Below are positions 17,647 through 60,239 of a DNA stretch of 64,000 nucleotides, one piece after another (the stretch's first letter is position 1; the number at the start of each line of letters is the position of its first letter). The position numbers and the translations under genes were made by a program. Below the pieces are notes generated by a model. It did not search any database and was not told the DNA's origin. It saw only the letters and a list, made by a program, of their open reading frames with translations. The stretch lies in the IMG/VR virus record IMGVR_UViG_3300031707_000001, positions 1 to 64,000 of that record. One strand, given 5' to 3'.

Positions 17647-17674
17647 TTGATTCGACAGCATATTTTGATATACT
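17647..17674 (+). promoter_or_regulatory. Sigma70-like promoter of HNH gene (leaderless)
   Basis: TTGATT-N16-TATACT, ATG 6 nt downstream, no SD. Confidence 0.6.
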
Positions 17675-17680
17675 ATAAGA

Positions 17681-18061
17681 ATGAAGTGCATTACTTGCAA
17701 AAAAGACAAACCCGAAGAAGAATTCATTTGGGCCGATAGAAAATTAGAATTACGTGGAGCGAGATGTAGGCTTTGCCAAAATGCATATTCGAAGCAACAC
17801 TATAGGTTGCATAAGCAAGACTATTTGAAACGCAATAGGTTGCGTAGAAACGAAAATAGAACCAAGCTTGCCCAATTGAAAAGTTCTACGCCGTGTGCGG
17901 ATTGTCATCAAAAATATCCTAGTTGTGCAATGGATTTTCATCATCTTCGCAATAAGCGTTTACGTATACAACCATCACAACAATGGGAAACATTGGTCAA
18001 AGAGATAAAGAAATGTGTATTGCTTTGTGCCAATTGTCATAGAATACGTACACACGCCTAA
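17681..18061 (+). CDS. HNH endonuclease
   Basis: CADC..DFHH..KCVLLCANCHRIRT. Confidence 0.85.
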   Translation: MKCITCKKDKPEEEFIWADRKLELRGARCRLCQNAYSKQHYRLHKQDYLKRNRLRRNENRTKLAQLKSSTPCADCHQKYPSCAMDFHHLRNKRLRIQPSQQWETLVKEIKKCVLLCANCHRIRTHA

Positions 18062-18102
18062 GCAAATGTGGTGTTCAACAGCAGCATAATAACCTGCCAC
18101 AA

Positions 18103-18177
18103 GCGAGCGTAGCCTAGCGGTCAGGCACAATCTTGCCATGATTGACCAGATGGGTTCGACCCCCATCGCTCGCTCCA
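18103..18177 (+). tRNA. tRNA-Gly(GCC)
   Basis: Loop TT-GCC-AT, U73, CCA. Confidence 0.93.
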
Positions 18178-18195
18178 ACCCCTTCAAGGAGATCC

Positions 18196-18399
18196 ATGAA
18201 GCTGAACAAAGAACAGAAACAGATTGCCAAGAAGTATGGCAAGTACTTCAACAACACAGGCGGTAACGAGATTGTAGAATTTGCCAATCGTGAGGATATA
18301 AGCTTTTTCAACAACTGTATTGCAGCTGCCATGCAGAGTTGTATATGGTCACAGATAAGTTTGATACAGACGCTCACCAGGGAAGGACTGTTGAAATGA
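18196..18399 (+). CDS. Hypothetical protein
   Basis: AAGGAG RBS. Confidence 0.6.
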   Translation: MKLNKEQKQIAKKYGKYFNNTGGNEIVEFANREDISFFNNCIAAAMQSCIWSQISLIQTLTREGLLK

Positions 18400-18782
18400 A
18401 CGTCGGAGAAGCACTCGTTGAGGCGGTACATGAGATAGGTAAATTACATGACCAAGTAAGGGAGTTGGAGGGACAGCTTAGAGTTGCCAACGCAATAGGT
18501 GATACGTTTTGGGAAGCCTTAAAAGCCTTACACCTTACGCATATAGATGTTAACAATCCTGGCCGGGTCGTTACTGAAGTCATTAACGAACGGGACCAAT
18601 TAAGAAAGCAATACATGGAATTGATAATGGCTGTTGGCAAAAAGTACCACGGTGAGACTCGTCATCAAACAGCTCTTCGATATATCAAAGACTCAGAGGA
18701 TACGTGTTTTGAAGAAGGTCCGAAAAGGGCAAGATATGATGACAGCTCTGATGACAGCTCTTTCGATTGGATGGGACATTAG
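18396..18782 (+). CDS. Hypothetical protein
   Basis: ATGA coupling. Confidence 0.6.
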   Translation: MNVGEALVEAVHEIGKLHDQVRELEGQLRVANAIGDTFWEALKALHLTHIDVNNPGRVVTEVINERDQLRKQYMELIMAVGKKYHGETRHQTALRYIKDSEDTCFEEGPKRARYDDSSDDSSFDWMGH

Positions 18783-18790
18783 GAGAAAAC

Positions 18791-19123
18791 ATGAACAGTG
18801 AATCCTGTTTGGACTGTACACACAAGCACCTCTGTCAAGCCATGATCATCCACGAGGAAGAGGTGCCTTTGGGTTATCCCGATGACATCAAGCGTGTGAT
18901 CGGCCACCTGGCTGAAGCCACCCGACACGCCTTGGGAAAACATCCTGGACTAGCCCTCTTACTGAGGCTGTGGCGCAAGACCGTACGTCAGACTAACTCG
19001 GTACCACCCTATGCTAAGATCATAGATTTTGTGGAAGTCCTGATTGCCTGTGAAAAGCAGAACCTGCCCTTTCCGGACCTGCCTGAAGGCCTGGGAAGCA
19101 CCACTGATCCGACCCCTAAATAG
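18791..19123 (+). CDS. Hypothetical protein
   Basis: AGGAG RBS. Confidence 0.65.
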   Translation: MNSESCLDCTHKHLCQAMIIHEEEVPLGYPDDIKRVIGHLAEATRHALGKHPGLALLLRLWRKTVRQTNSVPPYAKIIDFVEVLIACEKQNLPFPDLPEGLGSTTDPTPK

Positions 19124-19256
19124 GGGGTCGTAATCGGTTATAACTACATGCCACAGAATAAGTCTTTCATTGGGACGGTTAACGTGACCGTCAGAACGAG
19201 AGGCTTTTTCTTTACTAACCGTAATAATGCCCTTCGGGGCAGGAAAGGAGACCCAA

Positions 19257-20234
19257 ATGGAATCAACCCCATTCGGGCCAAATGTTGGAGCGACGATTAC
19301 AGGACTGCAGCTACAGGAGGAGGAACGGCCGAAAATTCCGGAAATAACCCCTCCGGCGCCTGCAGTATTGGAACCCGCTCCGGCAAAGCCGATCGTTGAC
19401 GAACTGCGTTTCTGCGCCATCTACATGATTGGAATAACCCCGGGTATGACCGGCAGAGTTATTCCGCCAGAGCGTTCGAAGAAGGGAGAAGATGTCGGCT
19501 GGGTAAATCCCAGAGGTTGGTTGGTAGTGGGCCCGTCAAATCAGGTGCAGGATGCCTCCTATAAGGAATTCCTGAACAGCCTTCAGGGATACCGGTGGTG
19601 GTTGAATGCCGGCAAGCTGTACCACACGAAAGAACGGAAGATCGTGTGGCAGAATCCATCCATCGTTGAAGATTACATCGAGGAATGCACCTGCAGCAAG
19701 TGTAGCTGGAAGGACACCAAAACCTACCAGGAAACGTGCGTTATGGCCGAAGCGAAGCAATTCTGTTGTCCCAGTTGCGGAAGCAGAGTTCTGACACGGA
19801 GGTCGTTTACGTCCGTATTTCCTGGCAAGCCAAATCAACGGGAGATTTTCAAGACGCCCGAAGACGACGTCCTGCAGCAGATGCACATTCGAATGTGCGA
19901 AGAGGATATTGTTCCGTCTGAGCTGCTGCCGAGAATCTGGGCGTTGTATCCCATCGGAGATACACCCTTTGATTGGGCGCCACAAGACGAGAAAGCGAAA
20001 GCCCTGGATCAGAAGTTCAAGGCTTTTGGCAAAACCATACGACCGTTCAAGACGGCCCGAACGGTAAACTTCTCGAAAGGCGCACATCATCGTATCTATC
20101 GGTGGGCCATGGAAGTACATTCCGAACTACAGTTCGGATGGGTGAAGGTAACCGATTTGTGTACCCAGTCGATTGATGGACCGACCGGTTACACGAGGAG
20201 ATTTGGGTTCGAACCCAAACTGACCGGAGTATGA
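19257..20234 (+). CDS. Hypothetical protein with Zn ribbons
   Basis: AAGGAG RBS; CSKC and CPSC. Confidence 0.7.
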   Translation: MESTPFGPNVGATITGLQLQEEERPKIPEITPPAPAVLEPAPAKPIVDELRFCAIYMIGITPGMTGRVIPPERSKKGEDVGWVNPRGWLVVGPSNQVQDASYKEFLNSLQGYRWWLNAGKLYHTKERKIVWQNPSIVEDYIEECTCSKCSWKDTKTYQETCVMAEAKQFCCPSCGSRVLTRRSFTSVFPGKPNQREIFKTPEDDVLQQMHIRMCEEDIVPSELLPRIWALYPIGDTPFDWAPQDEKAKALDQKFKAFGKTIRPFKTARTVNFSKGAHHRIYRWAMEVHSELQFGWVKVTDLCTQSIDGPTGYTRRFGFEPKLTGV

Positions 20235-21007: not shown

Positions 21008-21016
21008 TATATTCAC

Positions 21017-26923: not shown

Positions 26924-26997
26924 GGAGCTGTAGTGTAATGGCAGCACAAGACCCTTTGGCGGTCTTGGTCTGGGTTCAAATCCTGGCAGCTCTACCA
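26924..26997 (+). tRNA. tRNA-Gln(UUG)
   Basis: Loop CT-TTG-GC, CCA. Confidence 0.9.
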
Positions 26998-27009: not shown

Positions 27010-27039
27010 TTGACTGTGCAACCATCAATTTGATAATCT
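27010..27039 (+). promoter_or_regulatory. Sigma70-like promoter of HNH gene (leaderless)
   Basis: TTGACT-N18-TAATCT, ATG 6 nt downstream, no SD. Confidence 0.6.
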
Positions 27040-27045
27040 TCTTAT

Positions 27046-27564
27046 ATGAAGACTAAAAATATTGATGGTAGGAATTTTGTGCAAACAAGATGTTCAGTAT
27101 GTGACAAGAAAATTTGGCGTCGTCGGTGGTTCTTGCAACATACAGAACAGAGGGTATGCGGGCCAATCTGTAAACATAAATTACAACAAACCGGGAAAAA
27201 GGTTCAATGTAAGTTGTGCAAAACTCTTGTATACAGGCCTGCAGCACAACTGGCTAAGAGCAAATACTATTTTTGTAGTGCTAGTTGCAGAGCCAAATAT
27301 TACAACGCCAAACGTACAGGTTGTTTGCATCCCGCCTATACCACAGGTGCGTGTACATTCAGACGGGAACTGCTACGCAAACAGGCTGGTACTTGTGGAA
27401 ATACCAGATGTCCTATCATGAAAGCCGGAATACATATTCCAAGATTTTTGCTAGAAGCACATCATTTGGATTCTGATCGAACAAATAACAATCTTAGCAA
27501 TGGACGAGCATACTGTACGTGGTGTCATAAACATTTAACTATAACTGGTAACTTGCCTACTTGA
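27046..27564 (+). CDS. HNH endonuclease with N-terminal treble-clef Zn fingers
   Basis: FCSASC repeats; LEAHH..RTNN..NG..YCTWCH. Confidence 0.85.
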   Translation: MKTKNIDGRNFVQTRCSVCDKKIWRRRWFLQHTEQRVCGPICKHKLQQTGKKVQCKLCKTLVYRPAAQLAKSKYYFCSASCRAKYYNAKRTGCLHPAYTTGACTFRRELLRKQAGTCGNTRCPIMKAGIHIPRFLLEAHHLDSDRTNNNLSNGRAYCTWCHKHLTITGNLPT

Positions 27565-32834: not shown

Positions 32835-32849
32835 ACAACGGAGGTATAG

Positions 32850-33419: not shown

Positions 33420-33446
33420 ACAGCCGTCCTGGATTGTGGTAGGGTA

Positions 33447-35163: not shown

Positions 35164-35248
35164 GGGAGCGTGGTGGAATTCGCAGACACGTAAGATTTAG
35201 GATCTTATGCCGAAAGGCTTTCGGGTTCAAGTCCCGACGCTCCTACCA
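35164..35248 (+). tRNA. tRNA-Leu(UAG)
   Basis: Loop TT-TAG-GA, V arm GCC-GAAA-GGC, CCA. Confidence 0.9.
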
Positions 35249-35907
35249 TCAACTATATTGCGAATGATTGTAAGAAACTTTATAGCTTTACATTCTTTGA
35301 AATACGTCAATCCAGATACATCAATGATACAAAGTTCGATGCCATGTTCAGCACAAGCCAGCATCTTTCTATGATCGTTGGTTTTGATAGAAGCTAATTT
35401 ATTTGGGCCGTAGATGGGTTCGTAATGAAAGATACCGTTTAACTCAAAGGCTAGTTTCAAAGTTGGAATGTAAATATCAAGTTCGCCATTGATGGCATCC
35501 TTTCGGTTGAAATGAAATTCAAGTTTAGGGTATAACTTGAGTAATTCTGTAGCTAACCAAGCCTCAAGTTTGGACACACGGGTACCTTTGGTCTTATGAG
35601 TGTTGTTCCAAGTTGCAGCACATGATTGTGAACAGAAATGATGCTTAGTTTTTCTTATCTGACCGGCACGTTTGTAAAAAAGTTTTTGGCACTGTTGACA
35701 GTTCATTTTAATACGTGGGTGCTGATAACGATCTTGGCAAGATGTAGAACAAAATTCACCTGTTGAATGCTTATTGGTTTTGTTCAAAATAGCTTTTATT
35801 TCATGCTTGGTCCGATATGCGGTTTTATTGCAGTATTTACATCGCAGCGGAACTAGTTGTAGCGACTTATATGTGGCAAATTCTTTATCTGTACATAGCA
35901 ATTTCAT
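35227..35907 (-). CDS. Homing-type endonuclease (Zn fingers plus Vsr/EDxHD-like PD-(D/E)XK domain)
   Basis: FCSxSC repeats; ELDIYIP..LAFELNGIFHY; the only convincing minus-strand gene; AT-rich. Confidence 0.8.
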   Translation of the reverse strand: MKLLCTDKEFATYKSLQLVPLRCKYCNKTAYRTKHEIKAILNKTNKHSTGEFCSTSCQDRYQHPRIKMNCQQCQKLFYKRAGQIRKTKHHFCSQSCAATWNNTHKTKGTRVSKLEAWLATELLKLYPKLEFHFNRKDAINGELDIYIPTLKLAFELNGIFHYEPIYGPNKLASIKTNDHRKMLACAEHGIELCIIDVSGLTYFKECKAIKFLTIIRNIVDGRSVGT

Positions 35908-35914: not shown

Positions 35915-35943
35915 ATACTAAACCAAAAGATTGCCGATTGCAA
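35915..35943 (-). promoter_or_regulatory. Sigma70-like promoter of minus-strand endonuclease (leaderless)
   Basis: TTGCAA-N17-TAGTAT, ATG 7 nt downstream. Confidence 0.65.
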
Positions 35944-35954: not shown

Positions 35955-35977
35955 TTCAAATCCCTCCCGGCCTACCA
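35955..35977 (+). pseudogene. Orphan tRNA 3' end (T loop to CCA)
   Basis: TTCAAATCCCTCCCGGCCTACCA, 20/23 identical to the 3' end of tRNA-Leu(UAA). Confidence 0.55.
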
Positions 35978-46484: not shown

Positions 46485-46512
46485 TTTCGTTAACGTCAAC
46501 AAAAAGGAAAAG

Positions 46513-46723
46513 TATGAGTCCGTTTAGCTATTATTTGATTACGTTGTTGAGTGAGGCAACACTCATTCGAGTGGCGTTGAAGACAGACGTAGACGTTGAG
46601 TTTTACATGGAACCGGAAGGTATAGCACAGCTTTTGGCTTTGCTTCCTCCACACGTACGAAGCATTGGTCCAATTGTAGACGTTGAAGAGATATTTGACG
46701 TCGTAGACGCAACAGTGAAGTAA
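46513..46723 (+). CDS. Hypothetical protein
   Basis: AAGGA RBS. Confidence 0.5.
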
Positions 46724-46756
46724 ATACAGTGAAACAGTAGAAAGGATAGTGTTGGT

Positions 46757-47839
46757 ATGAAGAAAGAATCGAAAGATATTATGATCTCGTTCGACACGAC
46801 AGGGAGCATGTACCCCTGTCTGACCCAAGTGCGGCGCAACGTATCCGCCTTGGTAACCCGGTTGTTCAAGGACATTCCGGACCTGCGAATCGGTATTATT
46901 GCTCACGGTGACTACTGTGACAAGAATCTGACGTACATTACGAAGATGCTGGATCTGACCAACGACAAGGATAAGATCGTCCATTTCGTAAACAACGTGG
47001 AAGCTACAGGGGGTGGAGATTCCCCGGAGTGCTACGAGTTTGTGTTGAACCAGGTACGTACGCTGGCTTCCTGGTCAAGTGGCAAGTCGAAGATCCTGAT
47101 CATGATTGGTGACGATGTGGCGCATAGCCCAAGGGAAACGCAGAACTTCAAGAAGCTGGAATGGCAGAACGAGATCGGCCTGATCAAAGAAGCAGGTATC
47201 AAGGTCTATGCCGTGCAGGCGCTGGGACGCAGCCATGCAACCAGTTTCTGGCGTACAATGGCATTTAAGTCGAACGGCTACTACATCACGCTGAATCAGT
47301 TTGCGGACATTCAGCACATGATCACAGCGGCTGGCTACAAGCAGCGGGGTGACAGTTTCCTGCAGGACTATGAAAAGGAACTGATTACCAATGGTGTGAT
47401 GAACCGGGACCTGGATTCAGCGATCGGTACCATGTTGGGACGAGAAACAAGTTCCAGGTTCAAGGTCAGTCGTACTCGCTTGGGTGCTGTGGACAGTGGA
47501 CGTTTTCAGGTTATGGAAGTGGACGAAAGATGTCCCATCAAGGAATTTGTGGAAGCACAAGGTGTTACATTCAAGGTAGGACGTGGATTCTATGAGTTCA
47601 CGAAGTCATCGGTTATTCAGCACTATAAGGAAGTAATCCTGATGGATAACCGGACTGGTGACCTGTTCAGTGGAGACAAAGCCCGGGAGCTGGCTAACAT
47701 TCCGATCGGGGTAACAGCCAAGCTGGGCCCGACACTGGTACCTGGCTACACAGTATTTGTGCAGTCAACATCATATAACCGGGCGCTCATGCCAGGAACG
47801 AAGTTCCTGTACGAGATTCCGGATTGGGAACGAGTTTAG
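46757..47839 (+). CDS. von Willebrand factor A domain protein
   Basis: FDTTGSM (MIDAS), GDYCD, GGGDSPECYE, IGDD. Confidence 0.85.
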   Translation: MKKESKDIMISFDTTGSMYPCLTQVRRNVSALVTRLFKDIPDLRIGIIAHGDYCDKNLTYITKMLDLTNDKDKIVHFVNNVEATGGGDSPECYEFVLNQVRTLASWSSGKSKILIMIGDDVAHSPRETQNFKKLEWQNEIGLIKEAGIKVYAVQALGRSHATSFWRTMAFKSNGYYITLNQFADIQHMITAAGYKQRGDSFLQDYEKELITNGVMNRDLDSAIGTMLGRETSSRFKVSRTRLGAVDSGRFQVMEVDERCPIKEFVEAQGVTFKVGRGFYEFTKSSVIQHYKEVILMDNRTGDLFSGDKARELANIPIGVTAKLGPTLVPGYTVFVQSTSYNRALMPGTKFLYEIPDWERV

Positions 47840-52244: not shown

Positions 52245-52460
52245 ATGGCGTACAAGTTCAATAATGGAACAGGCGCTGTGATTTGTGATCACTGCGGCAT
52301 TACGATTGACGAAGGTCTTAGCTACACGGAATACGAAGAATGTTATGGAAGCGAGCAGAAGAAGGACTACTGCACCAGATGCTTCCACCCGGCAAACCGA
52401 CAGAAAGTTAAGGAGGAATCCGATGGCGAGCGATTTGATAGTGCCCGTTGTGAAGCTTGA
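52245..52460 (+). CDS. Hypothetical Zn-ribbon protein
   Basis: KFNNGTGAVICDHC. Confidence 0.6.
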   Translation: MAYKFNNGTGAVICDHCGITIDEGLSYTEYEECYGSEQKKDYCTRCFHPANRQKVKEESDGERFDSARCEA

Positions 52461-53547
52461 ACAGTTGAGACCTCACCCCAATGCTGACAAGTTGGAGTTG
52501 GTCAACGTATTGGGATACCAGATGTGTGTGCCCAAAGGATTGCACAAGGATGGCGACGTCATGGTGTACTTCCCTGCGGATACACTTATTCCGGCTACGT
52601 GGGCGGATTCTTTTGGCGTACGCAAGTACCTGAAGGGTAAGGATCAGGATCGTGTCGGCCGAATCAAGCTGCGGGGTGAGCCTTCGTTTGGACTGGTAGT
52701 CCAGCCGCCTAAGCTACCTGCTGATGTAAAATTCAATGTTGGCGACAATGTGGCTGACTACTATGGTGCCAAGAAGTACGAGCCGCCGGTTCGTGCTACT
52801 GCCGGCGATGCTGCTGCCCGGGATCCTTTGATCGATCCATTCTTTGAGCAGTTCACGGACGTGCAGAACGGACGTATGTTTACGGATATCTTCGTTGATG
52901 GCGAGGAAGTCATCTGCACGGAGAAGATCCACGGTACCAACTGCAAGGTTGGATGTATTGATGGTAAGCCTGTGGCTGGATCTATGGGCGTACGCAGAAA
53001 GCGTCCAACAAAATTATTTGAAGGTCAGGAAATTCCTTGTAAACTAACTGATGATGCAATTGCTACAAACACCTATTGGTTTCCGTTTAGCCTTCCTGGT
53101 GTTAGAAGCCTCATGTCTGACTTTGCAGAACAGGAAATCAAAGAGCCTGTACTGCTCTACGGAGAAGTATATGGTGGTAGTATACAGAGTCTGGACTACG
53201 GTATACCTAAAGGTAAGGGCTTGGGCTTTCGAGCATTTGGACTCAAAGTCAATGGTAGGTTTTTGGACTGGGACGTTTTCGCAGATACATGTATAAAATA
53301 TGGTGTTAAGATGGTTCCAGTTCTTGGGCGTGGCCCTTTCAGTATGGAGAAGGCCAAACACTATGCAGACGGAACATCTGTTCTTTGGACCGATGCGGGA
53401 GTTAAGGTAGAACATATGCGTGAAGGTTGTGTAATCTATCCGGTCAAGGAACGTGAACACCCGAAGATCGGGCGGGTCATCCTAAAGTATATCGGAACCG
53501 AGTATGAGCTTAGCAAACACAAAGAACAAGACACAAAGGACGTTTGA
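52423..53547 (+). CDS. RNA ligase, DRB0094 family
   Basis: N-terminal OB-like HPNADKLE; motif I TEKIHGTN, YGEVYG, REGCVI, LKYI. Confidence 0.9.
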   Translation: MASDLIVPVVKLEQLRPHPNADKLELVNVLGYQMCVPKGLHKDGDVMVYFPADTLIPATWADSFGVRKYLKGKDQDRVGRIKLRGEPSFGLVVQPPKLPADVKFNVGDNVADYYGAKKYEPPVRATAGDAAARDPLIDPFFEQFTDVQNGRMFTDIFVDGEEVICTEKIHGTNCKVGCIDGKPVAGSMGVRRKRPTKLFEGQEIPCKLTDDAIATNTYWFPFSLPGVRSLMSDFAEQEIKEPVLLYGEVYGGSIQSLDYGIPKGKGLGFRAFGLKVNGRFLDWDVFADTCIKYGVKMVPVLGRGPFSMEKAKHYADGTSVLWTDAGVKVEHMREGCVIYPVKEREHPKIGRVILKYIGTEYELSKHKEQDTKDV

Positions 53548-54516: not shown

Positions 54517-54718
54517 ATTTAGGAGCCAATTGTGACTGAAAAGAAGCTTACCAGAGGTGAGAAAAACAAAAAGCGGCATCGACTACAGCTTTTGCTCCGG
54601 CCAAAAACCCAGCGATGCGAACTATGTGGGGGACAGATGGCGTGGTGTACTACTTGTCAAACATGGACCCGCATATGTTGCGTAGACTACGGGACTTGCA
54701 TGTGCAGCTAACCTTTGT

Positions 54719-54780
54719 GGGTGCGTAGCTCAGTGGTAGAGCCATGGAAACCGTGGGTTCGAATCCCGCCGCATCCACCG
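54719..54780 (+). ncRNA. Anticodon-less tRNA-Ala-like RNA
   Basis: GGGTGCG/CGCATCC (G3.U70), A73, canonical D and T arms joined by about 9 nt; ends CCG. Confidence 0.75.
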
Positions 54781-54952
54781 ATCTTTGAAGGAAACCCGAA
54801 TGAACAAAGGAACATATGAGCAGAATAACATTAGGAATAGGGGCTATAAACTTTTTCGCACTTAGTTTTATAATGCCAGACAGTGAACAGCATATATGTC
54901 TGATGTTTGCACTGTTGTGTGCAATACTAGCTACAAGTGTTAGGAACCCTAA

Positions 54953-55156
54953 ATGACCAAAGAAGAGATGATACAGTGGATTGATAATGCTAGCTATGAA
55001 GACTTGCTTAGGAAGTGGCGGTTTGCTGATGTGGCAAATCCCTTCTTCTGCGCTGAAGTAGGTGCACATTACAAAGAGGTTATGTTCAAGCGCCGTGATG
55101 AAGTGGGACCTGAAGCAGCCGTGGCAGCAAGCAAGTCCGTAGGATGGGATAACTAG
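54953..55156 (+). CDS. Conserved phage hypothetical protein
   Basis: WIDNASYEDLLRKWRFA. Confidence 0.65.
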   Translation: MTKEEMIQWIDNASYEDLLRKWRFADVANPFFCAEVGAHYKEVMFKRRDEVGPEAAVAASKSVGWDN

Positions 55157-55678
55157 ATGACACAAGAACAAGAGCTGAAAGTAGTAGAACTTTGCAAGCA
55201 GTTTATGATGGTGGCGGAAGAGGTCAACTTGACCTTCATTGATCTGTGTAAGATCAGGGACAAGTACTTCCCAATCATCAATGGGCGTCGGGTACAAAAC
55301 CCCGCCGACATAGCAAAGAGCATTCAGATACTGGACGAACACAAGAAGAACCTGCAGGCCGTACTGACTGATACAATGGGTGTAAAATTCGAAGGGGAAC
55401 TGGTAACCGGGCATAAGTCTGATGCTAAAATACAGGCAGCTAAGCCTGTTGCAGCACTTCCGGCAGCGCCTTTGGAAGTACCCCAGGATGCAGTGATTTT
55501 GGATCAGTTCATCCTTGACTACAAAATGGGTGGTCCCAAGACCAAGTGGAAGGTGCGTCAGGTAATAGCCGAAGCACGAAAGACAGGATCCATATCCAAA
55601 AAGAACGTAGAGTATTTGAAGAAGGTTGCCAAAGGCGAACCTACAGATAAGTTCATTGCTACGCTGAAGGTAGAGTAA
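55157..55678 (+). CDS. Hypothetical protein
   Basis: 173 aa. Confidence 0.7.
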   Translation: MTQEQELKVVELCKQFMMVAEEVNLTFIDLCKIRDKYFPIINGRRVQNPADIAKSIQILDEHKKNLQAVLTDTMGVKFEGELVTGHKSDAKIQAAKPVAALPAAPLEVPQDAVILDQFILDYKMGGPKTKWKVRQVIAEARKTGSISKKNVEYLKKVAKGEPTDKFIATLKVE

Positions 55679-55682
55679 TTCT

Positions 55683-56375
55683 ATGATCATTGTTGCTGGA
55701 GATATACACGGGGATTTTGGAAGCTTGAATGCCATGATAAACAAGCAGAATCCAGAGATCATTTTGCAATGTGGAGATTTCGGATTTTGGCCCGCTATGC
55801 GTCCACAGGACTTCTACGGACCTACCGGCCACAAAAATGCCAAGCTTCCAATTCCCAGGGTGGGTAAGACCAAGGTATACTGGTGCGATGGAAACCACGA
55901 GGATCATCATTCGTTGATTGCACGTAAGACCAACGAGTTGTGGCCTAACGTATTCTATCAGCCTAGGGCTTCCACACTGCAACTGCCGGACGGTCGCACA
56001 GTGTTGTTTATGGGTGGCGCCGATTCCTACGACAAACCGTATCGGACTCCGAACATAGATTGGTTCCAGGAAGAACTGATTACTCAGGCCGATATGGATC
56101 GGTTGCCCAAGTGCAAAGTGGACATCGTTATAAGTCATACCTGCCCTTGTGAGTTTGTAATGGGAATGGGGCTTGGTTTTGATCTACGGCTTAACGATCC
56201 ATGCCGGCACGCATTGTCTATGATTCTACACGAATACAAGCCAGCGCTCTGGTACTTTGGGCATTGGCACAAAAACATAACATATTACGATAGCGAATGG
56301 GGTTGTCGGTGGACGGCATTAAGCCATACAACCGGCGGAGGGTCTGGCCGCTGGTGGGAGGAACTACGAACATGA
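55683..56375 (+). CDS. Calcineurin-like metallophosphoesterase
   Basis: GDIHG, GDFG, GNHE, SHT and GHWH motifs. Confidence 0.88.
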   Translation: MIIVAGDIHGDFGSLNAMINKQNPEIILQCGDFGFWPAMRPQDFYGPTGHKNAKLPIPRVGKTKVYWCDGNHEDHHSLIARKTNELWPNVFYQPRASTLQLPDGRTVLFMGGADSYDKPYRTPNIDWFQEELITQADMDRLPKCKVDIVISHTCPCEFVMGMGLGFDLRLNDPCRHALSMILHEYKPALWYFGHWHKNITYYDSEWGCRWTALSHTTGGGSGRWWEELRT

Positions 56376-56580
56376 TAACTGAAGTAGAAAGTCAAGCTGA
56401 ACTGAAGTCAATTGTCCGTTTGATTGGAGCAGCAGTACGCCATTCTTGGGAGAGATACGAGGCTACGGAAGACTCCGAAATGTTGGCGATCCTTTCAGAT
56501 TTGGATAAAGCCAAAAATGCAATTACATCTCACATTAAGATGTTTCAGGTCTTATCGAAAGATCTCAAGGAACACCAAAC

Positions 56581-57033
56581 ATGAAAGTCTATAAGCTTGA
56601 AGTAATGGTGATCGATCACGACGAATTAGGCCCGGATGGAATTCGTGAAGAGCTTGAAAATGCAGACTTCGCAAATCATTGTATTCATCCTGCAGTGAAG
56701 AAAGTTGAATGTCGAGATATAGGTGAGTGGAGCGACGATCATCCGCTCAATATAGGCAGTGCCTGCGAAGAAGAATATAGGCGTTTGTTCGAAGAGCCTT
56801 CACCGGAGGACTTTGTGCCACCTACGTGTGGACGGTGCTATGCCGAAAACGTTGAACTGTTTCCCGCTACGTGCAACGAGAAGCCGGAGGAGCGTCGGGG
56901 TGAGCCTATTGGCATGTATCACTGCCCGGATTGTGGTGCCATGCTGATAGCAGGACTTCCCCATCCCACGGTGTGTGCGCTTTGTCGGGACCACAAGCAT
57001 CCCGGGTTTGATGAACTAAATATGGGGCGATAA
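56581..57033 (+). CDS. Hypothetical protein
   Basis: Two-part ORF with C-terminal Zn ribbons. Confidence 0.65.
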   Translation: MKVYKLEVMVIDHDELGPDGIREELENADFANHCIHPAVKKVECRDIGEWSDDHPLNIGSACEEEYRRLFEEPSPEDFVPPTCGRCYAENVELFPATCNEKPEERRGEPIGMYHCPDCGAMLIAGLPHPTVCALCRDHKHPGFDELNMGR

Positions 57034-57107
57034 GGCGCAATATATTGTGCATTAACCCGATTTTGGATCGATAAAGCGTACAATAATGCGCCTACAAAGG
57101 AGTCAAA

Positions 57108-57419
57108 GTGATAATCAACGAACTGATTCGGATGTGTAACAAATATTACGACGATGGATACCTGGCGTTGTATTGGAACTTCAAGAAGTCCAAGCCCGTG
57201 GATACAAATTCCGGGGATACGTTGGCGCTGTTCATCGTGCGTGAAATCAACGATACCTTTCAGCCCAGACTGTCGGATAAGAAGCAGTTGATAGAGGCTA
57301 AGCGATGTATGCGTAGTGCCTGTGTACAACTGGCGAATATGATAATAGGGATAGACAACGAATACGATCGTCTACCGAGGAGAAAGAAATGTCATTCGAA
57401 GCAGGTCCCTTTGGCATGA
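57108..57419 (+). CDS. Conserved phage hypothetical protein
   Basis: GDTLALFIVREI. Confidence 0.6.
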   Translation: MIINELIRMCNKYYDDGYLALYWNFKKSKPVDTNSGDTLALFIVREINDTFQPRLSDKKQLIEAKRCMRSACVQLANMIIGIDNEYDRLPRRKKCHSKQVPLA

Positions 57420-57664
57420 TCGCTGAAATGTGTCAGAGAAAATTGGACAAGACACCTTTACAGGAACCAGAGAAGAGTCCTTTCTTTTCCTGGTGGTGTG
57501 AAGTGCTTAGTGTTTACGACGAAGATGCCATGGACAGATTCTCACTAAGAGATATTGCGGACATGGCATTTGCAGCTGGTCAGAACTATCAGAAGGCGCT
57601 ACAATACGAACCCAAAGTCAATAAAAAGGAGGCCCAAGATGCCACAGTTTGCGGTACTCACTGA
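57389..57664 (+). CDS. Hypothetical protein
   Basis: GAGGAG RBS. Confidence 0.5.
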   Translation: MSFEAGPFGMIAEMCQRKLDKTPLQEPEKSPFFSWWCEVLSVYDEDAMDRFSLRDIADMAFAAGQNYQKALQYEPKVNKKEAQDATVCGTH

Positions 57665-57818
57665 AGATGGTGTTGACGATAAGCGGTATGATTCAATCGA
57701 CGAAGCAACAGATGCAGCCAAAGCAGCCGTCGAGGATCCGGATACGGAAGTGGAGATTGTCCAGATATTGAGGAAGGTTTCTTCGACTCTGGAAATCACA
57801 GTAGAAGACGTGGCGTAG
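57639..57818 (+). CDS. Small acidic hypothetical protein
   Basis: AAGGAGG before ATG; MPQFAVLTE. Confidence 0.55.
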   Translation: MPQFAVLTEDGVDDKRYDSIDEATDAAKAAVEDPDTEVEIVQILRKVSSTLEITVEDVA

Positions 57819-57833
57819 ACAAGATTTGCATGC

Positions 57834-57862
57834 TTGACAAGTCTCAGTAACTCCACTAATAT
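57834..57862 (+). promoter_or_regulatory. Sigma70 promoter of HNH gene (leaderless)
   Basis: TTGACA-N17-TAATAT, ATG 6 nt downstream. Confidence 0.75.
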
Positions 57863-57868
57863 GGTGGC

Positions 57869-58426
57869 ATGAAGATAAAGAGTATTGTTGCCAACGATGG
57901 ACAAAAGCGAAAGCATGCACTAATACGTTGCCACTATTGCCATAAATATTTTTGGAAATCAATACACTTAATGAAACAGAGTATAAATCATTTCTGCTCT
58001 GTTGTGTGTAGTCGTTTAGGACACCGTAAGCGAAAGAAATTCAAATGTGCCTTTTGTGGCGAACAAGGTGAGAAGCCACTTCAAAAATTTTCTAAAAGTA
58101 AATCGAAGCTACATTTTTGTTCTCGGCGATGCAAGGATTTAGGCCAAAGTATAACTTATGGCTTAGAAAAAATGTGGCCTAAGCACTACAATAGAAATGG
58201 CGGGAGTGTAGATTTTTATCGTAGGCTTGCATGGCACAGTTATAAGCACTACTGCGCAGGTTGTGGCTATGATAAAATACCTGAAATTCTAGAGGTGCAC
58301 CATATCGATCGAAATAGAAAAAATAATAAAGTAGAGAATCTAATACTCCTTTGTTCCACCTGTCATACGATAATTACACTCGGTTACGGTAAACTGGTAA
58401 ATCGTAAACTTGTTATGGGGCAGTAG
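57869..58426 (+). CDS. HNH endonuclease with Zn fingers
   Basis: FCSxxC twice; CAGCG..LEVHHIDRNRKNN..NLILLCSTCH. Confidence 0.9.
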   Translation: MKIKSIVANDGQKRKHALIRCHYCHKYFWKSIHLMKQSINHFCSVVCSRLGHRKRKKFKCAFCGEQGEKPLQKFSKSKSKLHFCSRRCKDLGQSITYGLEKMWPKHYNRNGGSVDFYRRLAWHSYKHYCAGCGYDKIPEILEVHHIDRNRKNNKVENLILLCSTCHTIITLGYGKLVNRKLVMGQ

Positions 58427-58492
58427 CCAAATGGCCACGGCGACAGACCTGCAATCTGTTTTTTCGGAGTTCGATTCTCCGCTGCTCCACCA
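58417..58492 (+). tRNA. tRNA-Ala(UGC), C33
   Basis: G3.U70, A73, loop CC-TGC-AA, CCA. Confidence 0.9.
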
Positions 58493-58527
58493 ACTTTCAA
58501 ACAAAAGCCAAAACAAGGAGATGCGGT

Positions 58528-59274
58528 ATGGGTAAGTTATGCGAAGTGTTAGCGGTAGAAGGTGAATTGGACTCGACCTGCAAGGCAGTCCTGGAAGAAG
58601 CGACGAAGACGTTCAAAGATAAGGCTGCTCACTTTGTGGGTCAGACTAAAACCTACGAACCCTTCGAAGAAGGTACGCCAGGGTTGCCCGAAGAACACCT
58701 GGCCATGGTCACAACGGTAAACGAGAAGCTGGCCTACGTGTTTGAACACCTGGTCAAGCTGATTGATGCCAAGGCCCAGAAGGACGCTACAAATCAGGTA
58801 GCCAAGGCCGACATCGTGACGGATAGCGGAACGTTGGCTACGGGTGTGCCGGCCACGACATTGTTGGGGTTGGAAGCAACCCTGCGTCAGGTGAAGGCAT
58901 TGGCGCTGGAAGTGCCCACGTTGCCTCCAGGCATCGAATGGAAGAAGGATCCTGCCTTGGGCAAGGACATCTATCATCGGGTACATCCCGCCGTGACGTT
59001 CAAGACCCGTAAGACCTTCCGACACAAAGTGCTGGTGGAGCCCACCAAGGAACACCCTGCTCAGATCGAAAAGTGGAGCGAGGACGAGAACATCGGCAAG
59101 TTTATCACAGATGCATGGTCAGGCATGTTGACGCCGGCCGAGAAGAGTGATATGATTGGCCGCATTGATACGTTGGCTCGGGCTGTGAAAGAGGCCCGGC
59201 AGCGTGCCAATACAACCGAAGTTGTGAAGATCAAGCTGGCGAAGAGTCTGATGGACTACATTCTGCCGGCATAA
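58528..59274 (+). CDS. Conserved hypothetical protein (family I recognise from bacteria and phage; function unknown)
   Basis: KLCEVLAVE..TYEP..KDATNQVAKADI..LLGLE..HPAQIE..WSG..AVKEARQRAN. Confidence 0.8.
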   Translation: MGKLCEVLAVEGELDSTCKAVLEEATKTFKDKAAHFVGQTKTYEPFEEGTPGLPEEHLAMVTTVNEKLAYVFEHLVKLIDAKAQKDATNQVAKADIVTDSGTLATGVPATTLLGLEATLRQVKALALEVPTLPPGIEWKKDPALGKDIYHRVHPAVTFKTRKTFRHKVLVEPTKEHPAQIEKWSEDENIGKFITDAWSGMLTPAEKSDMIGRIDTLARAVKEARQRANTTEVVKIKLAKSLMDYILPA

Positions 59275-59382
59275 TGCTTTTGGGTAGACTTATCCTTATC
59301 GTTATGTTCTGATCGTGCTCCCGACTAAGTCTCGGAAAGAGCGATCAGATATCATCGTTATCGTTATAGTTTTGCCCAAGCA
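59275..59382 (+). ncRNA. Structured RNA with hexamer repeats in a symmetric internal loop
   Basis: TTGGGTAGAC/GTTTTGCCCAA; TCTGATCG/CGATCAGA; TTATCS/ATCGTT units on both loop strands. Confidence 0.65.
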
Positions 59383-59415
59383 ACCTCAGGCGGATGCGTC
59401 ATCCGACAAGGCGGG

Positions 59416-59548
59416 TGCAGGTTCTAATTTAATGTGCGTCGTGGGTTCAATTCCCACTCCGGTCTCCTTCGTACACAAGCCGGGTATTGTGTTCGAAGAG
59501 ACCGGGTAGCTCAGTGGTAGAGCACACAGATTCAACATGAAGCCTGCA
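59416..59548 (+). ncRNA. Circularly permuted tRNA-like RNA (T arm, closed acceptor, then D arm)
   Basis: GTGGG-TTCAATT-CCCAC, TCCGGTC/GACCGGG, TA-GCTC-AGTGGTA-GAGC, TGTG/CACA, TGCAGG/CCTGCA. Confidence 0.78.
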
Positions 59549-59630
59549 ATTCCAGCTCAAGGAGACGAGGAGCCAAATGGATTGTATCCTATGAAGCCTT
59601 CGGGCTGATTAGAAAACATGAAATATCATT

Positions 59631-59668
59631 GGGGGCCCAGATTGGGAATTGATCTGGGCCCCTATTTT
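59631..59668 (+). terminator. Rho-independent terminator
   Basis: GGGGCCCAGAT/ATCTGGGCCCC followed by TATTTT. Confidence 0.75.
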
Positions 59669-59673
59669 ACACT

Positions 59674-59759
59674 GCCGGAGTGCCTCAGTGGCGACAGGAC
59701 GGGTTTTGTAAACCCGCACATAAGAAACATCGGGAGTTCGAGTCTCTCCTCCGGCTCCA
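59674..59759 (+). tRNA. tRNA-Thr(UGU) with 15-nt variable region
   Basis: Loop TT-TGT-AA, V region CACATAAGAAACATC, CCA. Confidence 0.85.
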
Positions 59760-59781
59760 TTAATGGTAGAGCATTTACCGT

Positions 59782-59810
59782 TTGACAATAGGTCTACCTT
59801 ATGCAATAGT
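59782..59810 (+). promoter_or_regulatory. Sigma70-like promoter of HNH gene (leaderless)
   Basis: TTGACA-N17-AATAGT, ATG 6 nt downstream. Confidence 0.6.
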
Positions 59811-59816
59811 ATTGAC

Positions 59817-60239
59817 ATGAGTAGATCATCACGTTTTAGAATCTGTTCTGTATGCCACAAATCTTATCATGCGTGGGCTAAGGTAGCACTATACTGTTCA
59901 AATGCATGTCAATGGGAACAAGATTACCAAAAACGAATTTTGATTGTTCGAAAGACGCATAATTGGTTTGATGGTTGGCAGAGCTGCACGTCTATTCGAA
60001 ATGCTTTACATAGAGAACGAGGTATACGTTGTGAGATTTGCGGTGGTACAAAGTGGCAGGGAAAACCAATGCCAGTAGTGATGGACCATATTGATGGAAA
60101 TTCGGACAATTGGGTAGATTCTAACTTGCGGCTCGTATGCGGGAACTGTGATATGCAATTGCCTACGTATAAAAATAAGAACAAGGGCAAGGGTCGACAT
60201 AGTCGACGTTTACGCTATCAGCAAGGAAAGTCTTACTAG
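59817..60239 (+). CDS. HNH endonuclease
   Basis: YCSNAC; CEICG..MDHIDGNSDN..NLRLVCGNC. Confidence 0.9.
   Translation: MSRSSRFRICSVCHKSYHAWAKVALYCSNACQWEQDYQKRILIVRKTHNWFDGWQSCTSIRNALHRERGIRCEICGGTKWQGKPMPVVMDHIDGNSDNWVDSNLRLVCGNCDMQLPTYKNKNKGKGRHSRRLRYQQGKSY

What the first reader, a model, noticed from the sequence alone, without database searches (positions are those of the whole stretch)
17647..60239. Five tRNA-adjacent endonuclease cassettes share an own-promoter, leaderless-ATG design
Seen: 17681, 27046, 35907(-), 57869 and 59817 each have a sigma70-like -35/-10 (spacer 16-18) with the ATG 6-7 nt after the -10 and no Shine-Dalgarno, while most other genes here use AGGAG. All are AT-richer, carry Cys Zn-finger motifs and abut or overlap tRNA genes. 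Established: freestanding homing endonucleases (T4 SegB) promote inheritance of tRNA loci. Inference: a self-contained, leaderless-expressed mobile nuclease module that spreads tRNA genes or cuts host/competitor tRNA loci.
Basis: partly seen in the sequence, partly recalled or inferred. Interest (0 to 1): 0.62.

Follow-up and report, generated by a model that had tools for sequence, protein, structure and literature searches.

The report
Self-promoted nuclease genes beside phage tRNAs
Five selfish DNA-cutting genes wedged among the tRNA genes of a 211-kb sediment phage (plus two elsewhere in its genome) each start six or seven bases behind their own promoter with no ribosome-binding site. Their relatives in many other phage contigs sit next to tRNA genes, so the pattern is real, although homing nucleases in phage tRNA clusters are already a known theme.

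Summary
The window is the first 64 kb of a single-contig 210.7-kb phage genome with 27 tRNAs and a tmRNA. At 17681, 27046, 35907(-), 57869 and 59817 an ATG lies 6 nt (c3: 7 nt) after a sigma70-like -10, with a -35 16-18 nt upstream and no Shine-Dalgarno. By the strict criteria, 5 of the genome's 8 nuclease genes qualify against 0 of 315 other called genes (p about 2e-9). Qualifiers include a sixth gene at 200358; c3 and a seventh at 115306(-) are weaker.

Four proteins are HNH endonucleases. c3 has zinc fingers plus a Vsr/I-Bth0305I-like nuclease domain. All five are AT-rich outliers.

Relatives elsewhere are tRNA-linked. Half of the c4 family sits within 150 nt of tRNA-Ala(UGC), against a 3% background. 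c5 relatives often sit by tRNA-Thr. c3 relatives lie antisense at tRNA 3' ends, and young copies are flanked by a perfect 20-bp duplication of tRNA T54-N73.

The promoter/ATG layout is not inherited with the families: 46% of c4 homologues have an SD. It looks like convergence within this phage.

Best reading: free-standing homing-type nucleases whose translation depends on transcripts from their own promoter. No RNA data exist, so leaderless expression stays inferred.

The parts
17551..17628 (+). tRNA-Asp(GTC), upstream neighbour of c1
   Evidence: ARAGORN; Rfam
17647..17674 (+). c1 promoter-like site: TTGATT, 16 nt, TGaTATACT (extended -10). It ends 6 nt before the ATG.
17681..18061 (+). c1 ORF, 126 aa, HNH endonuclease. 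A CxxC motif at residues 3-6 fixes the start. There is an in-frame stop 4 codons upstream.
   Evidence: PHROG 2255, E 6e-26; homologues align from residue 2-3; GC 38%
18103..18177 (+). tRNA-Gly(GCC), 42 nt downstream of c1
26924..26997 (+). tRNA-Gln(TTG), upstream neighbour of c2
27010..27039 (+). c2 promoter-like site: TTGACT, 18 nt, TGaTAATCT, then 6 nt to the ATG. Alternative reading: 16 nt, GATAAT, 8 nt.
27046..27564 (+). c2 ORF, 172 aa, a diverged member of the zf-FCS + HNH superfamily of c4. An SD-like AGGA precedes an internal GTG at 27079, but the conserved N-terminal DG.R motif lies upstream of that GTG.
35164..35248 (+). tRNA-Leu(TAG). Its 3' end is overlapped by 22 nt by the 3' end of c3, in convergent orientation.
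35227..35907 (-). c3 ORF, 226 aa: two MYM/FCS-type zinc fingers plus a C-terminal Vsr-like PD-(D/E)xK nuclease domain
   Evidence: Pfam zf-FCS; AlphaFold model, pLDDT 83; I-Bth0305I Z 9.9 and Vsr Z 9.4; over 3500 homologues
35915..35943 (-). c3 promoter-like site: TTGCAA, 17 nt, TAGTAT, then 7 nt to the ATG. A weak match, 8 of 12.
   Evidence: below the threshold
35955..35977 (+). Orphan tRNA 3'-end remnant (T-loop, T-stem 3' strand, acceptor 3' strand, CCA) on the far side of c3. It matches tRNA-Leu(TAG) T54-N73 at 14 of 20 and tRNA-Leu(TAA) at 17 of 19.
57834..57862 (+). c4 promoter-like site: TTGACA, 17 nt, TAATAT, then 6 nt to the ATG
57869..58426 (+). c4 ORF, 185 aa, two zf-FCS fingers plus HNH. 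The first finger (C21, C24, C43, C47) is invariant in the family, so the public 151-aa gene call starting at M35 is too short.
58417..58492 (+). tRNA-Ala(TGC). Its first 10 nt are the last three codons and the stop of c4.
59674..59759 (+). tRNA-Thr(TGT), upstream neighbour of c5
59782..59810 (+). c5 promoter-like site: TTGACA, 17 nt, TGcAATAGT, then 6 nt to the ATG
59817..60239 (+). c5 ORF, 140 aa, HNH endonuclease. The alternative in-frame ATG at 59763 would place the promoter inside the ORF.
   Evidence: homologues

Best explanation
The five loci are free-standing, horizontally acquired nuclease genes of homing-endonuclease type that have colonised the tRNA array of a 211-kb phage. Four are HNH enzymes. 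c3 is a Vsr/EDxHD-like enzyme with zinc fingers.

Target choice (inferred from where the families sit):
- The c4 family goes with tRNA-Ala(UGC).
- The c5 family often goes with tRNA-Thr.
- The c3 family goes with the T-arm and 3' end of any tRNA.
- A cut in a cassette-free competitor genome would be repaired from the cassette-bearing genome. That copies the nuclease gene and the tRNA next to it, as shown for T4 SegB.

Expression (inferred from sequence):
- Each gene is its own transcription unit. A sigma70-type promoter, mostly with a TGn extended -10, places +1 on or next to the A of an ATG that has no Shine-Dalgarno.
- Read-through transcripts from upstream would therefore be poorly translated.
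- Only transcripts started at the gene's own promoter carry the 5'-terminal AUG that leaderless initiation needs.
- This would tie nuclease synthesis to one promoter class and keep it low.
- It is the functional counterpart of the hairpin-plus-proximal-promoter gating of T4 I-TevI/II/III and Aeh1 MobE.
- For c4, a second brake is likely. The last three codons and the stop lie inside tRNA-Ala, so RNase P processing should yield a non-stop mRNA, as proposed for segB and tRNA-Arg.

The layout arose in this genome by convergence and was not inherited with the genes.

Shown: the sequence layout and its statistics, the protein families, the tRNA linkage in relatives, and the duplicated tRNA ends.
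Inferred: the transcription start sites, leaderless translation, the cleavage targets and homing.
For: - Layout and statistics. Five of 8 nuclease genes against 0 of 315 others; a spike at 6 nt.
- No SD at any of the seven ATGs (read by eye), against 65% of crude gene calls with a core of at least 4 nt.
- All seven start with ATG, six with ATGAA.
- The first 40 nt are less structured than internal windows in 6 of 7 genes (-2.6 against -4.7 kcal/mol, p 0.03).
- Start codons are fixed by conserved N-terminal zinc fingers or motifs and by nearby in-frame stops.
- Nuclease identity.
- Foreign composition.
- c4 family and tRNA-Ala. Some loci have the HNH gene between an intact divergent tRNA-Ala and a truncated canonical tRNA-Ala 5' fragment.
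- c5 family.
- c3 family: antisense at tRNA 3' ends; perfect 20-bp repeats of T54-N73 for four isotypes; six contigs with two copies.
- The gene map of a relative with 85% protein identity lacks room for c4 and c5.
- Precedents: SegB recognises the T-arm motif and cuts at tRNA 3' ends, and its stop codon is removed by tRNA processing (PMC2330249). SegB-tRNA linkage is widespread (PMC13096335).
Against: - No RNA data: every public run that holds the phage is DNA, so no start site is mapped.
- Promoter-like hexamers are no more frequent in the window than in shuffles.
- c3 (8 of 12) and c7 (7 of 12) are weak matches.
- c5 has an upstream in-frame ATG (59763). c2 has an SD-like AGGA before an internal GTG (27079).
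- The host is unknown, so neither its promoter consensus nor its capacity for leaderless translation is known.
- The layout is not enriched at homologues in other phages.
- No cassette-free allele was recovered as DNA, and no empty site for c3-type elements was found.
- A 2-nt cutter like I-Bth0305I does not by itself explain a 20-bp duplication.
Confidence: 0.6

Rival explanations
1. The promoters are real, but the mRNAs are not truly leaderless. Transcription starts a few to tens of nt away, or the ORFs are translated from read-through transcripts by an SD-independent route (A-rich starts, ribosomal protein S1). The 6-nt spacing would then be a by-product of packing a promoter into a very short gap after a tRNA.
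For: No start site is mapped. About a third of crude gene calls in this genome also lack a clear SD. c5 and c2 have alternative starts. The gaps after the tRNAs are only 53-58 nt.
Against: The spacing is 6 nt in six of seven genes, including c6 and c7, which have no tRNA nearby. In-frame stops 3-4 codons upstream and conserved N-termini fix the ATG in c1, c2, c4 and c6. Seven nt after the -10 is the usual start distance for sigma70 promoters (established knowledge).
Confidence: 0.2
2. The nuclease genes are retained because they serve the phage, not merely themselves. As shown for SegB against the Septu, OLD and ToxIN defences, cuts in tRNA genes drive segmental amplification or exchange of tRNA genes, which helps against tRNA-cleaving host defences. 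The private promoters provide early expression for that role. This is compatible with the main explanation as an added function.
For: PMC13096335. The phage invests heavily in RNA repair and rescue: 27 tRNAs, a tmRNA, an RNA ligase and a Y-RNA-like element. Some c4-family cassettes travel with their own divergent tRNA-Ala.
Against: No tandem amplification is seen in this genome or in the contigs laid on it. The AT-rich composition and patchy distribution fit selfish elements. No functional test was possible.
Confidence: 0.25
3. The promoters exist chiefly to transcribe downstream tRNA genes, and the nuclease ORFs merely sit between promoter and tRNA.
For: c1 is followed by tRNA-Gly after 42 nt. 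c4 runs into tRNA-Ala. No terminator separates them.
Against: c2 and c5 are followed by protein genes. c3 is antisense to the tRNAs. c6 and c7 are more than 50 kb from any tRNA. Most tRNAs of the array have no such promoter. A tRNA promoter gives no reason for an ATG exactly 6 nt after the -10.
Confidence: 0.1
4. c3 and its family are not classical homing endonuclease genes. They are compact insertion elements of about 0.8 kb that insert directly after tRNA position 73 by staggered cleavage at T54 and N73 and gap filling, like a transposon with a 20-bp target duplication.
For: Perfect 20-bp repeats match the local tRNA in four different isotypes. The cassette ends are conserved. Six phage contigs hold two copies next to different tRNAs. 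There is no isotype preference.
Against: No empty site was found. The nearest solved relative makes 2-nt overhangs (PMC3239194). No joining activity is encoded. In 24 of 32 loci the repeat is at or below background, including the window copy at 14 of 20.
Confidence: 0.35
5. Chance: hexamer look-alikes happen to lie before these ATGs.
For: The overall density of promoter-like sites equals shuffle expectation.
Against: Binomial 4e-12 and Fisher 2e-9 for 5 of 8 nuclease genes. TGn is present in 5 of 7. SD is absent in 7 of 7.
Confidence: 0.02

Closest known systems
T4 SegB (GIY-YIG homing endonuclease in the T4 tRNA cluster; PMC2330249, PMC13096335)
   Same: It is a free-standing nuclease gene inside a phage tRNA array. 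It recognises the conserved T-arm motif and cuts at tRNA 3' ends, the same geometry as the T54-N73 junctions of the c3 family. It carries neighbouring tRNA genes along. Its stop codon overlaps a tRNA, so tRNA processing truncates the mRNA, as at c4 and tRNA-Ala. It shows no isotype preference, like the c3 family.
   Different: The fold differs: GIY-YIG against HNH or Vsr-like. segB has no promoter of its own, and its SD and start are sequestered in a hairpin. Here each gene has a private promoter and no SD. The c4 family is isotype-specific (tRNA-Ala), which was not reported for SegB.
Phage T5 F-TflI/II/IV and mycobacteriophage HNH genes in tRNA clusters (cited in PMC2330249 and PMC6409571)
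   Same: They are HNH-type nuclease ORFs located among phage tRNA genes and are proposed to shape tRNA repertoires.
   Different: No relationship by sequence was tested here. No promoter-at-the-ATG layout and no family-to-isotype link is reported in the texts read.
I-Bth0305I, prototype of the EDxHD (Vsr-like) homing endonucleases (PDB 3R3P; PMC3239194)
   Same: The C-terminal domain of c3 matches it best (Z 9.9, 97 of 97 residues aligned). The family-invariant D144, N157 and H161 have the spacing of its D196, N208 and H213.
   Different: I-Bth0305I is encoded in a group I intron in recA and binds DNA through NUMOD/HTH motifs. c3 is free-standing, uses two MYM/FCS-type zinc fingers and sits at tRNA 3' ends with a 20-bp duplication.
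Promoter-gated translation of T4 I-TevI/II/III and Aeh1 MobE (as summarised in PMC2330249)
   Same: Only transcripts started at a promoter lying directly at the gene are translatable. Read-through transcripts are silent. This keeps a toxic nuclease low and timed.
   Different: There the gate is a hairpin that hides the SD in long transcripts. Here the proposed gate is the need for a 5'-terminal AUG, with no SD at all.
Known leaderless mRNAs tied to nuclease control or phage regulation: the C.PvuII transcript (PMC2175313) and lambda cI from PRM (own knowledge)
   Same: The promoter is placed so that +1 is the A of the AUG, and the mRNA is translated without an SD.
   Different: Those are regulators, one per system. 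Here six or seven unrelated nuclease genes in one genome share the layout.

Membership tests
Free-standing homing endonuclease gene (HNH type): c1, c2, c4, c5 | HNH nuclease motif with zinc-binding cysteines | tested here: met
   Pfam HNH/HNH_3 passes its cutoff for c4 and is weak for c2 and c5. PHROG HNH families: c1 6e-26, c4 4e-19, c5 5e-16, c2 7.5e-4. HH..N..H and the cysteines are invariant in alignment A1.
Free-standing homing endonuclease gene (HNH type): c1, c2, c4, c5 | Stand-alone ORF of foreign composition between host-phage genes, not inside an intron or intein | tested here: met
   The ORFs lie between tRNAs or genes. GC is 37-42%, against 47.7% for genes; percentile 0.5-7 for these four.
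Free-standing homing endonuclease gene (HNH type): c1, c2, c4, c5 | Patchy presence among close relatives (filled and empty alleles) | tested here: inconclusive
   The gene map of the contig with 85% protein identity has gaps of 250 and 541 nt where the window has 710-864 and 1207 nt, but its DNA could not be fetched. Other assemblies are the same phage.
Free-standing homing endonuclease gene (HNH type): c1, c2, c4, c5 | Recurrent position next to one conserved target gene in unrelated genomes | tested here: met
   c4: tRNA-Ala(UGC) is the nearest tRNA within 150 nt in 32 of 64 representatives, against a 3.4% background, p about 1e-24. c5: a Thr tRNA is nearest in 6 of 17 loci. c1 and c2: no relatives were retrieved, so these are untested.
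Free-standing homing endonuclease gene (HNH type): c1, c2, c4, c5 | Site-specific cleavage of the cassette-free allele and gene conversion in mixed infection | not testable with these tools
   Needs purified protein and phage crosses.
SegB-like (GIY-YIG) tRNA-targeting homing endonucleases | GIY-YIG catalytic domain | tested here: not met
   No GIY-YIG hit. The domains are HNH or Vsr-like. These genes work like SegB but are not members of its family.
SegB-like (GIY-YIG) tRNA-targeting homing endonucleases | Target is the T-arm and 3' end of tRNA genes | tested here: inconclusive
   In the c3 family the junctions lie exactly at T54 and N73. Cleavage itself was not observed.
EDxHD / Vsr-like homing endonucleases (c3) | Vsr-like PD-(D/E)xK fold | tested here: met
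   Model pLDDT 83. 3R3P Z 9.9, 3HRL Z 9.9, 1CW0 Z 9.4. Foldseek gives probability 1.0 with E about 1e-3.
EDxHD / Vsr-like homing endonucleases (c3) | Catalytic Asp, Asn/His and His residues | tested here: inconclusive
   D144, N157 and H161 are invariant in A2. Their spacing is 13 and 17, against 12 and 17 for D196, N208 and H213. No residue-level superposition was made.
EDxHD / Vsr-like homing endonucleases (c3) | NUMOD/HTH DNA-binding region; residence in a group I intron | tested here: not met
   The N-terminus is two zf-FCS fingers. The gene is free-standing.
Leaderless mRNA genes | No Shine-Dalgarno; AUG start codon | tested here: met
Leaderless mRNA genes | The -10 element ends 6-7 nt before the start codon | tested here: met
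Leaderless mRNA genes | Transcription start on the A of the AUG and translation from it | not testable with these tools
   No RNA run holds the sequence.

The most novel reading that the evidence does not exclude
Three linked points that the evidence does not exclude:
1. c3 may stand for a large, uncharacterised class of minimal mobile elements of phage tRNA arrays (over 3500 proteins, almost only on phage contigs). Each has a Vsr-like nuclease with MYM/FCS zinc fingers. The elements insert right after tRNA position 73, duplicate T54-N73 (20 bp) and spread between tRNA isotypes within a genome. That behaviour is transposon-like rather than classical homing.
2. The c4 HNH family may be an isotype-specific partner of tRNA-Ala(UGC). 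It may cut the canonical gene near position 40 and bring its own divergent, immune tRNA-Ala, so that it really spreads a tRNA gene.
3. Leaderless, own-promoter gating may be a general and convergently evolved way for phage nuclease genes to escape read-through translation.
Probability: 0.35. Interest if true: 0.75.

Novelty: new variant of a known kind. Interest (0 to 1): 0.55.

Why it matters
Homing nucleases in phage tRNA clusters are known (T4 SegB, T5 F-Tfl) and have recently been linked to escape from tRNA-cleaving defences. How their toxic expression is restrained outside T4 is unknown.

This phage gives a clean, testable case. Six or seven unrelated nuclease genes have converged on one layout (-10, six or seven bases, ATG, no SD). 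That layout would make translation depend on one promoter.

The comparative work also yields two leads of wider use:
- An HNH family tied to a single tRNA isotype offers candidate sequence-specific cutters of the tRNA-Ala(UGC) gene.
- A very abundant, unnamed Vsr-like family marks its insertions with a 20-bp tRNA-end duplication. This gives a sequence signature for dating and tracing how phage tRNA arrays are built.

It also shows that standard gene callers truncate such genes: c4 is on record as 151 aa instead of 185 aa.

Tried and rejected
- Megablast of 12 kb against GenBank phages: no match. A tblastn of an AAA protein found only distant phages, so no cultured relative exists.
- Read laying on 56500-61500 with four DNA runs: only near-identical low-depth contigs and no joint that skips c4 or c5.
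- Relatives of the flanking DUF7873 gene: none in IMG/VR. In JGI metagenomes, only the same phage and relatives at 40-46% identity without tRNAs nearby. Contigs with 84-88% protein identity exist, but their DNA could not be served.
- Single-protein scans for c1 and c2: nothing.
- Test of whether the layout is inherited: no enrichment at 70 c4-family starts and only a marginal one at 44 c3-family starts. The HNH gene of a relative with 31% GC (L166) lacks it.
- Tree of the c4 family against the nearest tRNA: poorly resolved, and the label is not clustered. I read the tRNA-Ala link as spread across the family, not clade-specific.
- Rfam at relaxed threshold: no further partial tRNAs next to c1, c2, c4 or c5.
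- Exact-pattern searches for empty sites of two young c3-type elements: none.
- Minus-strand ORFs next to tRNAs (54650-55762, 46496-46984, 32829-33512) look like antisense artefacts.
- Ten other ORFs next to tRNAs have no nuclease domain in Pfam.
- c8 (88578-89372, - strand), an eighth HNH gene, shows no clear layout.
- Genome contigs: the c3 family occurs on only 9 MAG contigs of scattered taxonomy, most of them short (one of 363 kb), which is most likely binned phage DNA.

Full report
WHAT THE WINDOW IS. The window is bases 1-64000 of a single-contig genome of 210,732 bp at 48% GC. All 27 tRNA genes found by ARAGORN, and a tmRNA, lie between 17.5 and 61.4 kb on the + strand. It has no close match among GenBank phages. 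The same phage was assembled from several sediment metagenomes. No RNA run holds it.

CHECK OF THE OBSERVATION. Direct reading confirms the layout at all five sites.
- c1: TTGATT, 16 nt, TGaTATACT, 6 nt, ATG 17681.
- c2: TTGACT, 18 nt, TGaTAATCT, 6 nt, ATG 27046 (or 16 nt, GATAAT, 8 nt).
- c3 on the minus strand: TTGCAA, 17 nt, TAGTAT, 7 nt, ATG 35907.
- c4: TTGACA, 17 nt, TAATAT, 6 nt, ATG 57869.
- c5: TTGACA, 17 nt, TGcAATAGT, 6 nt, ATG 59817.

The independent consensus scanner lists c1, c2, c4 and c5. c3 falls below its threshold.

That scanner also shows that promoter-like sites are no more frequent in the window than in dinucleotide shuffles: 27 against 28.5, and 24 against 25.3. Hexamer matches alone therefore mean nothing here. 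What is far from chance is where they lie.
- Genome-wide, a site of at least 9 of 12 matches ends 5-8 nt before the start of 5 of the 8 nuclease genes, and before none of 315 other called genes (Fisher 2e-9; binomial 4e-12).
- The distance from the -10 to ORF-opening ATGs spikes at exactly 6 nt: 7 cases, against 1.6 +/- 1.3 at other distances.
- Five of the seven promoters carry TGn before the -10.
- None of the seven has an SD at its ATG (read by eye). About 65% of 320 crude gene calls have a core of at least 4 nt.
- All seven start with ATG, six with ATGAA.
- The first 40 nt of the ORFs are less structured than internal windows in six of the seven.

One is an HNH gene at 200358 (TTGCCA, 17 nt, TGcTAAATT, 6 nt, ATG). 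A weaker one is an HNH gene at 115306 on the minus strand (TTTACT, 17 nt, TGgTAATCT, 6 nt, ATG). Neither is near a tRNA.

Three small ORFs outside the window follow strong TTGACA promoters at 6-9 nt (142919, 159444 on the minus strand, 151827). The layout is therefore a class of transcription unit in this phage, dominated by nuclease genes, and not a property of tRNA adjacency.

ARE THE ATGs THE REAL STARTS?
- In c1, c2, c4 and c6 an in-frame stop lies 3-4 codons upstream.
- In c1 the first CxxC is at residues 3-6, and homologues align from residue 2-3.
- In the c4 family the first zinc finger (C21, C24, C43, C47) is invariant. The public gene call of 151 aa starting at M35 is therefore truncated.
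- c2 shares the N-terminal M.K...DG.R segment with c4 and other family members. This argues against the SD-like AGGA and GTG at 27079.
- c5 remains ambiguous: there is an in-frame ATG at 59763, with the promoter then inside the ORF.

WHAT THE PROTEINS ARE.
- c1, c4 and c5 are clear HNH endonucleases, and c2 is a diverged one.
- c2, c3 and c4 share MYM/FCS-type zinc fingers.
- The C-terminal half of c3 has no Pfam family, but it is very conserved in more than 3500 metagenomic proteins.
- An AlphaFold model of c3 (pLDDT 83) matches the I-Bth0305I homing endonuclease domain (Z 9.9), the DUF559-type protein 3HRL (Z 9.9) and Vsr (Z 9.4).
- The family-invariant D144, N157 and H161 have the spacing of the I-Bth0305I active-site residues.
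- All five genes are compositional outliers: 37-42% GC, against 47.7 +/- 3.9%.

LINK TO tRNA GENES IN RELATIVES.

For c4, four homologues fetched from unrelated metagenomic contigs all lay next to tRNA-Ala(UGC). A profile search of IMG/VR found 249 relatives. In the best 80 loci every one has a tRNA within 2.5 kb. Among 64 representatives below 90% identity, tRNA-Ala(UGC) is the nearest tRNA within 150 nt in 32, against a background share of 3.4% (p about 1e-24). The gene can lie on either side and in either orientation. About ten loci have tRNA-Ala as the only tRNA in 5 kb.

In the window and in several relatives (L001, L027, L031, L061, L068, L069) the ORF runs into the first bases of tRNA-Ala.

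In L043, L057 and L086 the HNH gene lies between two tRNA-Ala sequences. One is an intact but divergent tRNA-Ala. The other is a truncated, canonical tRNA-Ala 5' fragment that breaks off at about position 40. This is what one expects if the resident gene was cut there and replaced by a cassette bringing its own insensitive copy.

A tree did not resolve isotype-specific clades.

For c5, 17 relatives all lie on the tRNA strand. A Thr tRNA is the nearest in 6 and second nearest in 2. c1 and c2 gave no relatives in single-protein scans. c1-like genes do recur in other phages' tRNA arrays.

THE c3 FAMILY. In 79 IMG/VR loci the gene is antisense to the tRNAs in all but two of the 74 loci that have tRNAs. 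Its 3' end abuts or overlaps the 3' end of an intact tRNA of any isotype.

On the other side of the gene, 27-49 nt before the ATG, lies an orphan copy of the tRNA 3' end. In L129 (Gly), L114 (Pro), L148 (Met) and L092 (a CUA-anticodon tRNA) this copy is a perfect 20-bp repeat of T54 to N73 of the very tRNA at the other end. Of 32 non-redundant loci, 8 reach at least 15 of 20 matches, where mismatched pairs never exceed 15. The window copy (35955-35977) has decayed to 14 of 20.

Young copies also share a conserved 3' terminal motif, and a palindrome whose left arm is the duplicated T-loop. Six contigs hold two copies next to different tRNAs.

The family is nearly absent from cellular genomes: 9 MAG contigs, most of them short.

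This geometry is that of T4 SegB, which recognises GGTTCRANTCC and cuts at the tRNA 3' end. How a Vsr-like enzyme would create a 20-bp duplication is unexplained, and no empty site was found.

IS THE LAYOUT PART OF THE MOBILE UNIT? The evidence says no.
- At 70 non-redundant c4-family starts, an SD is as frequent as at control ORFs of the same loci (46% against 41%), and a -10 at 5-8 nt is not enriched (11% against 10%).
- For 44 c3-family starts there is only a marginal excess (41% against 26%, p 0.045).
- A few relatives do show the layout (L061, L066, L031).
- The spacers of the seven promoters of this phage share no sequence.

So unrelated insertions converged on one layout in this genome, which points to selection in this phage-host system.

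PRESENCE OR ABSENCE IN CLOSE RELATIVES. A contig whose DUF7873 protein is 85% identical has the same gene order. It has 250 nt where the window has 710-864 nt including c4, and 541 nt where the window has 1207 nt including c5. Its DNA could not be fetched, so this is indirect evidence.

HOW IT MOST LIKELY WORKS.
- Each nuclease gene is an autonomous unit read from a sigma70-type promoter.
- Because the ATG has no SD, read-through transcripts of the densely packed tRNA and ORF array should not be translated.
- Only transcripts that start at the gene's own promoter have the 5'-terminal AUG that leaderless initiation needs.
- This would couple nuclease synthesis to one promoter class and keep it low. 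T4 solves the same problem with an SD-hiding hairpin plus a proximal promoter.
- For c4, the overlap of its last codons and stop with tRNA-Ala predicts truncation by RNase P, as proposed for segB and tRNA-Arg.
- The nucleases then cut tRNA genes of cassette-free relatives and are copied in by repair, taking tRNA genes along.
- A benefit to the phage through tRNA-array amplification, as shown for SegB, is possible but untested.

All steps after the sequence layout are inferred.

COMPARISON AND NOVELTY. Homing nucleases in phage tRNA clusters are known (SegB; T5 F-Tfl; HNH genes of mycobacteriophage clusters). Leaderless translation has been suggested for a hidden HNH gene in mycobacteriophages. 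A leaderless transcript controls the PvuII system.

I found no report of the following in the papers searched:
- the convergent -10/6-7 nt/ATG layout at six or seven nuclease genes of one phage;
- the isotype-specific link of an HNH family to tRNA-Ala(UGC);
- the abundant Vsr-like family with a T54-N73 duplication.

I rate this as a new variant of a known kind, of moderate interest.

Noticed in passing
window 41078-41446: Phage-encoded tmRNA (Rfam 82.7 bits) with tag peptide GNTLKLAA. A T-arm-like fragment follows at 41738-41752.
   Followed up: partly
window 59415-59552: Sub-threshold Y-RNA-like (YrlA) match: 35 bits against a gathering score of 69, E 4e-4, over the full model length. It has a long closing stem with T-arm and D-arm motifs in permuted order. 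It lies between the DUF7873 gene and tRNA-Thr, and an RNA ligase gene lies at 52285-53547.
   Followed up: partly
window 54719-54780: A 62-nt tRNA-like element with acceptor stem, D-arm and T-arm but no anticodon arm, just after tRNA-Leu(TAA). Rfam calls it tRNA/tmRNA-like; ARAGORN does not call it.
   Followed up: partly
window 63642-63873: Two adjacent tRNA-like genes missed by ARAGORN (63642-63760 and 63763-63873). Each has an insertion of about 40 nt in the anticodon region, and the two insertions share a motif (GTACAG..TTGTAT..CTG.CTACAGC..CAAAAT).
   Followed up: partly
window 60905-60977: A 73-bp stretch present here but absent from the other assembly of the same phage (Ga0315273_10000005, L167). 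The two are otherwise 99.99% identical over 11.4 kb.
   Followed up: no
G000:C1 142884-143053, 151789-151970 and 159307-159480 (outside the window): Strong TTGACA promoters followed after 6-9 nt by the ATG of small ORFs: a 44-aa basic protein, a 47-aa protein, and a 45-aa zinc-ribbon protein that heads a minus-strand operon. The promoter-at-the-ATG layout is therefore not confined to nuclease genes.
   Followed up: partly
window 57869-57970: The public gene call for c4 starts at M35 (151 aa) and cuts off the invariant first zinc finger. Automatic callers seem to miss starts of this kind that lack an SD.
   Followed up: yes
window 58528-59274: A conserved DUF7873 (PF25283) gene lies between c4/tRNA-Ala and tRNA-Thr/c5. 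The same family also lies near a c4 homologue in an unrelated contig (L005) and has 244 relatives, many on large phage contigs.
   Followed up: partly
L043 2398-3035, L057 2399-3005, L086 2401-3061: c4-family HNH genes flanked by an intact but divergent tRNA-Ala(UGC) and a truncated canonical tRNA-Ala 5' fragment ending near position 40.
   Followed up: partly
window 46069-46108: A tRNA-like 5' half (D-arm plus an anticodon-arm-like hairpin with a CUA loop) directly after tRNA-Gly(TCC). Neither tRNA tool calls it.
   Followed up: no
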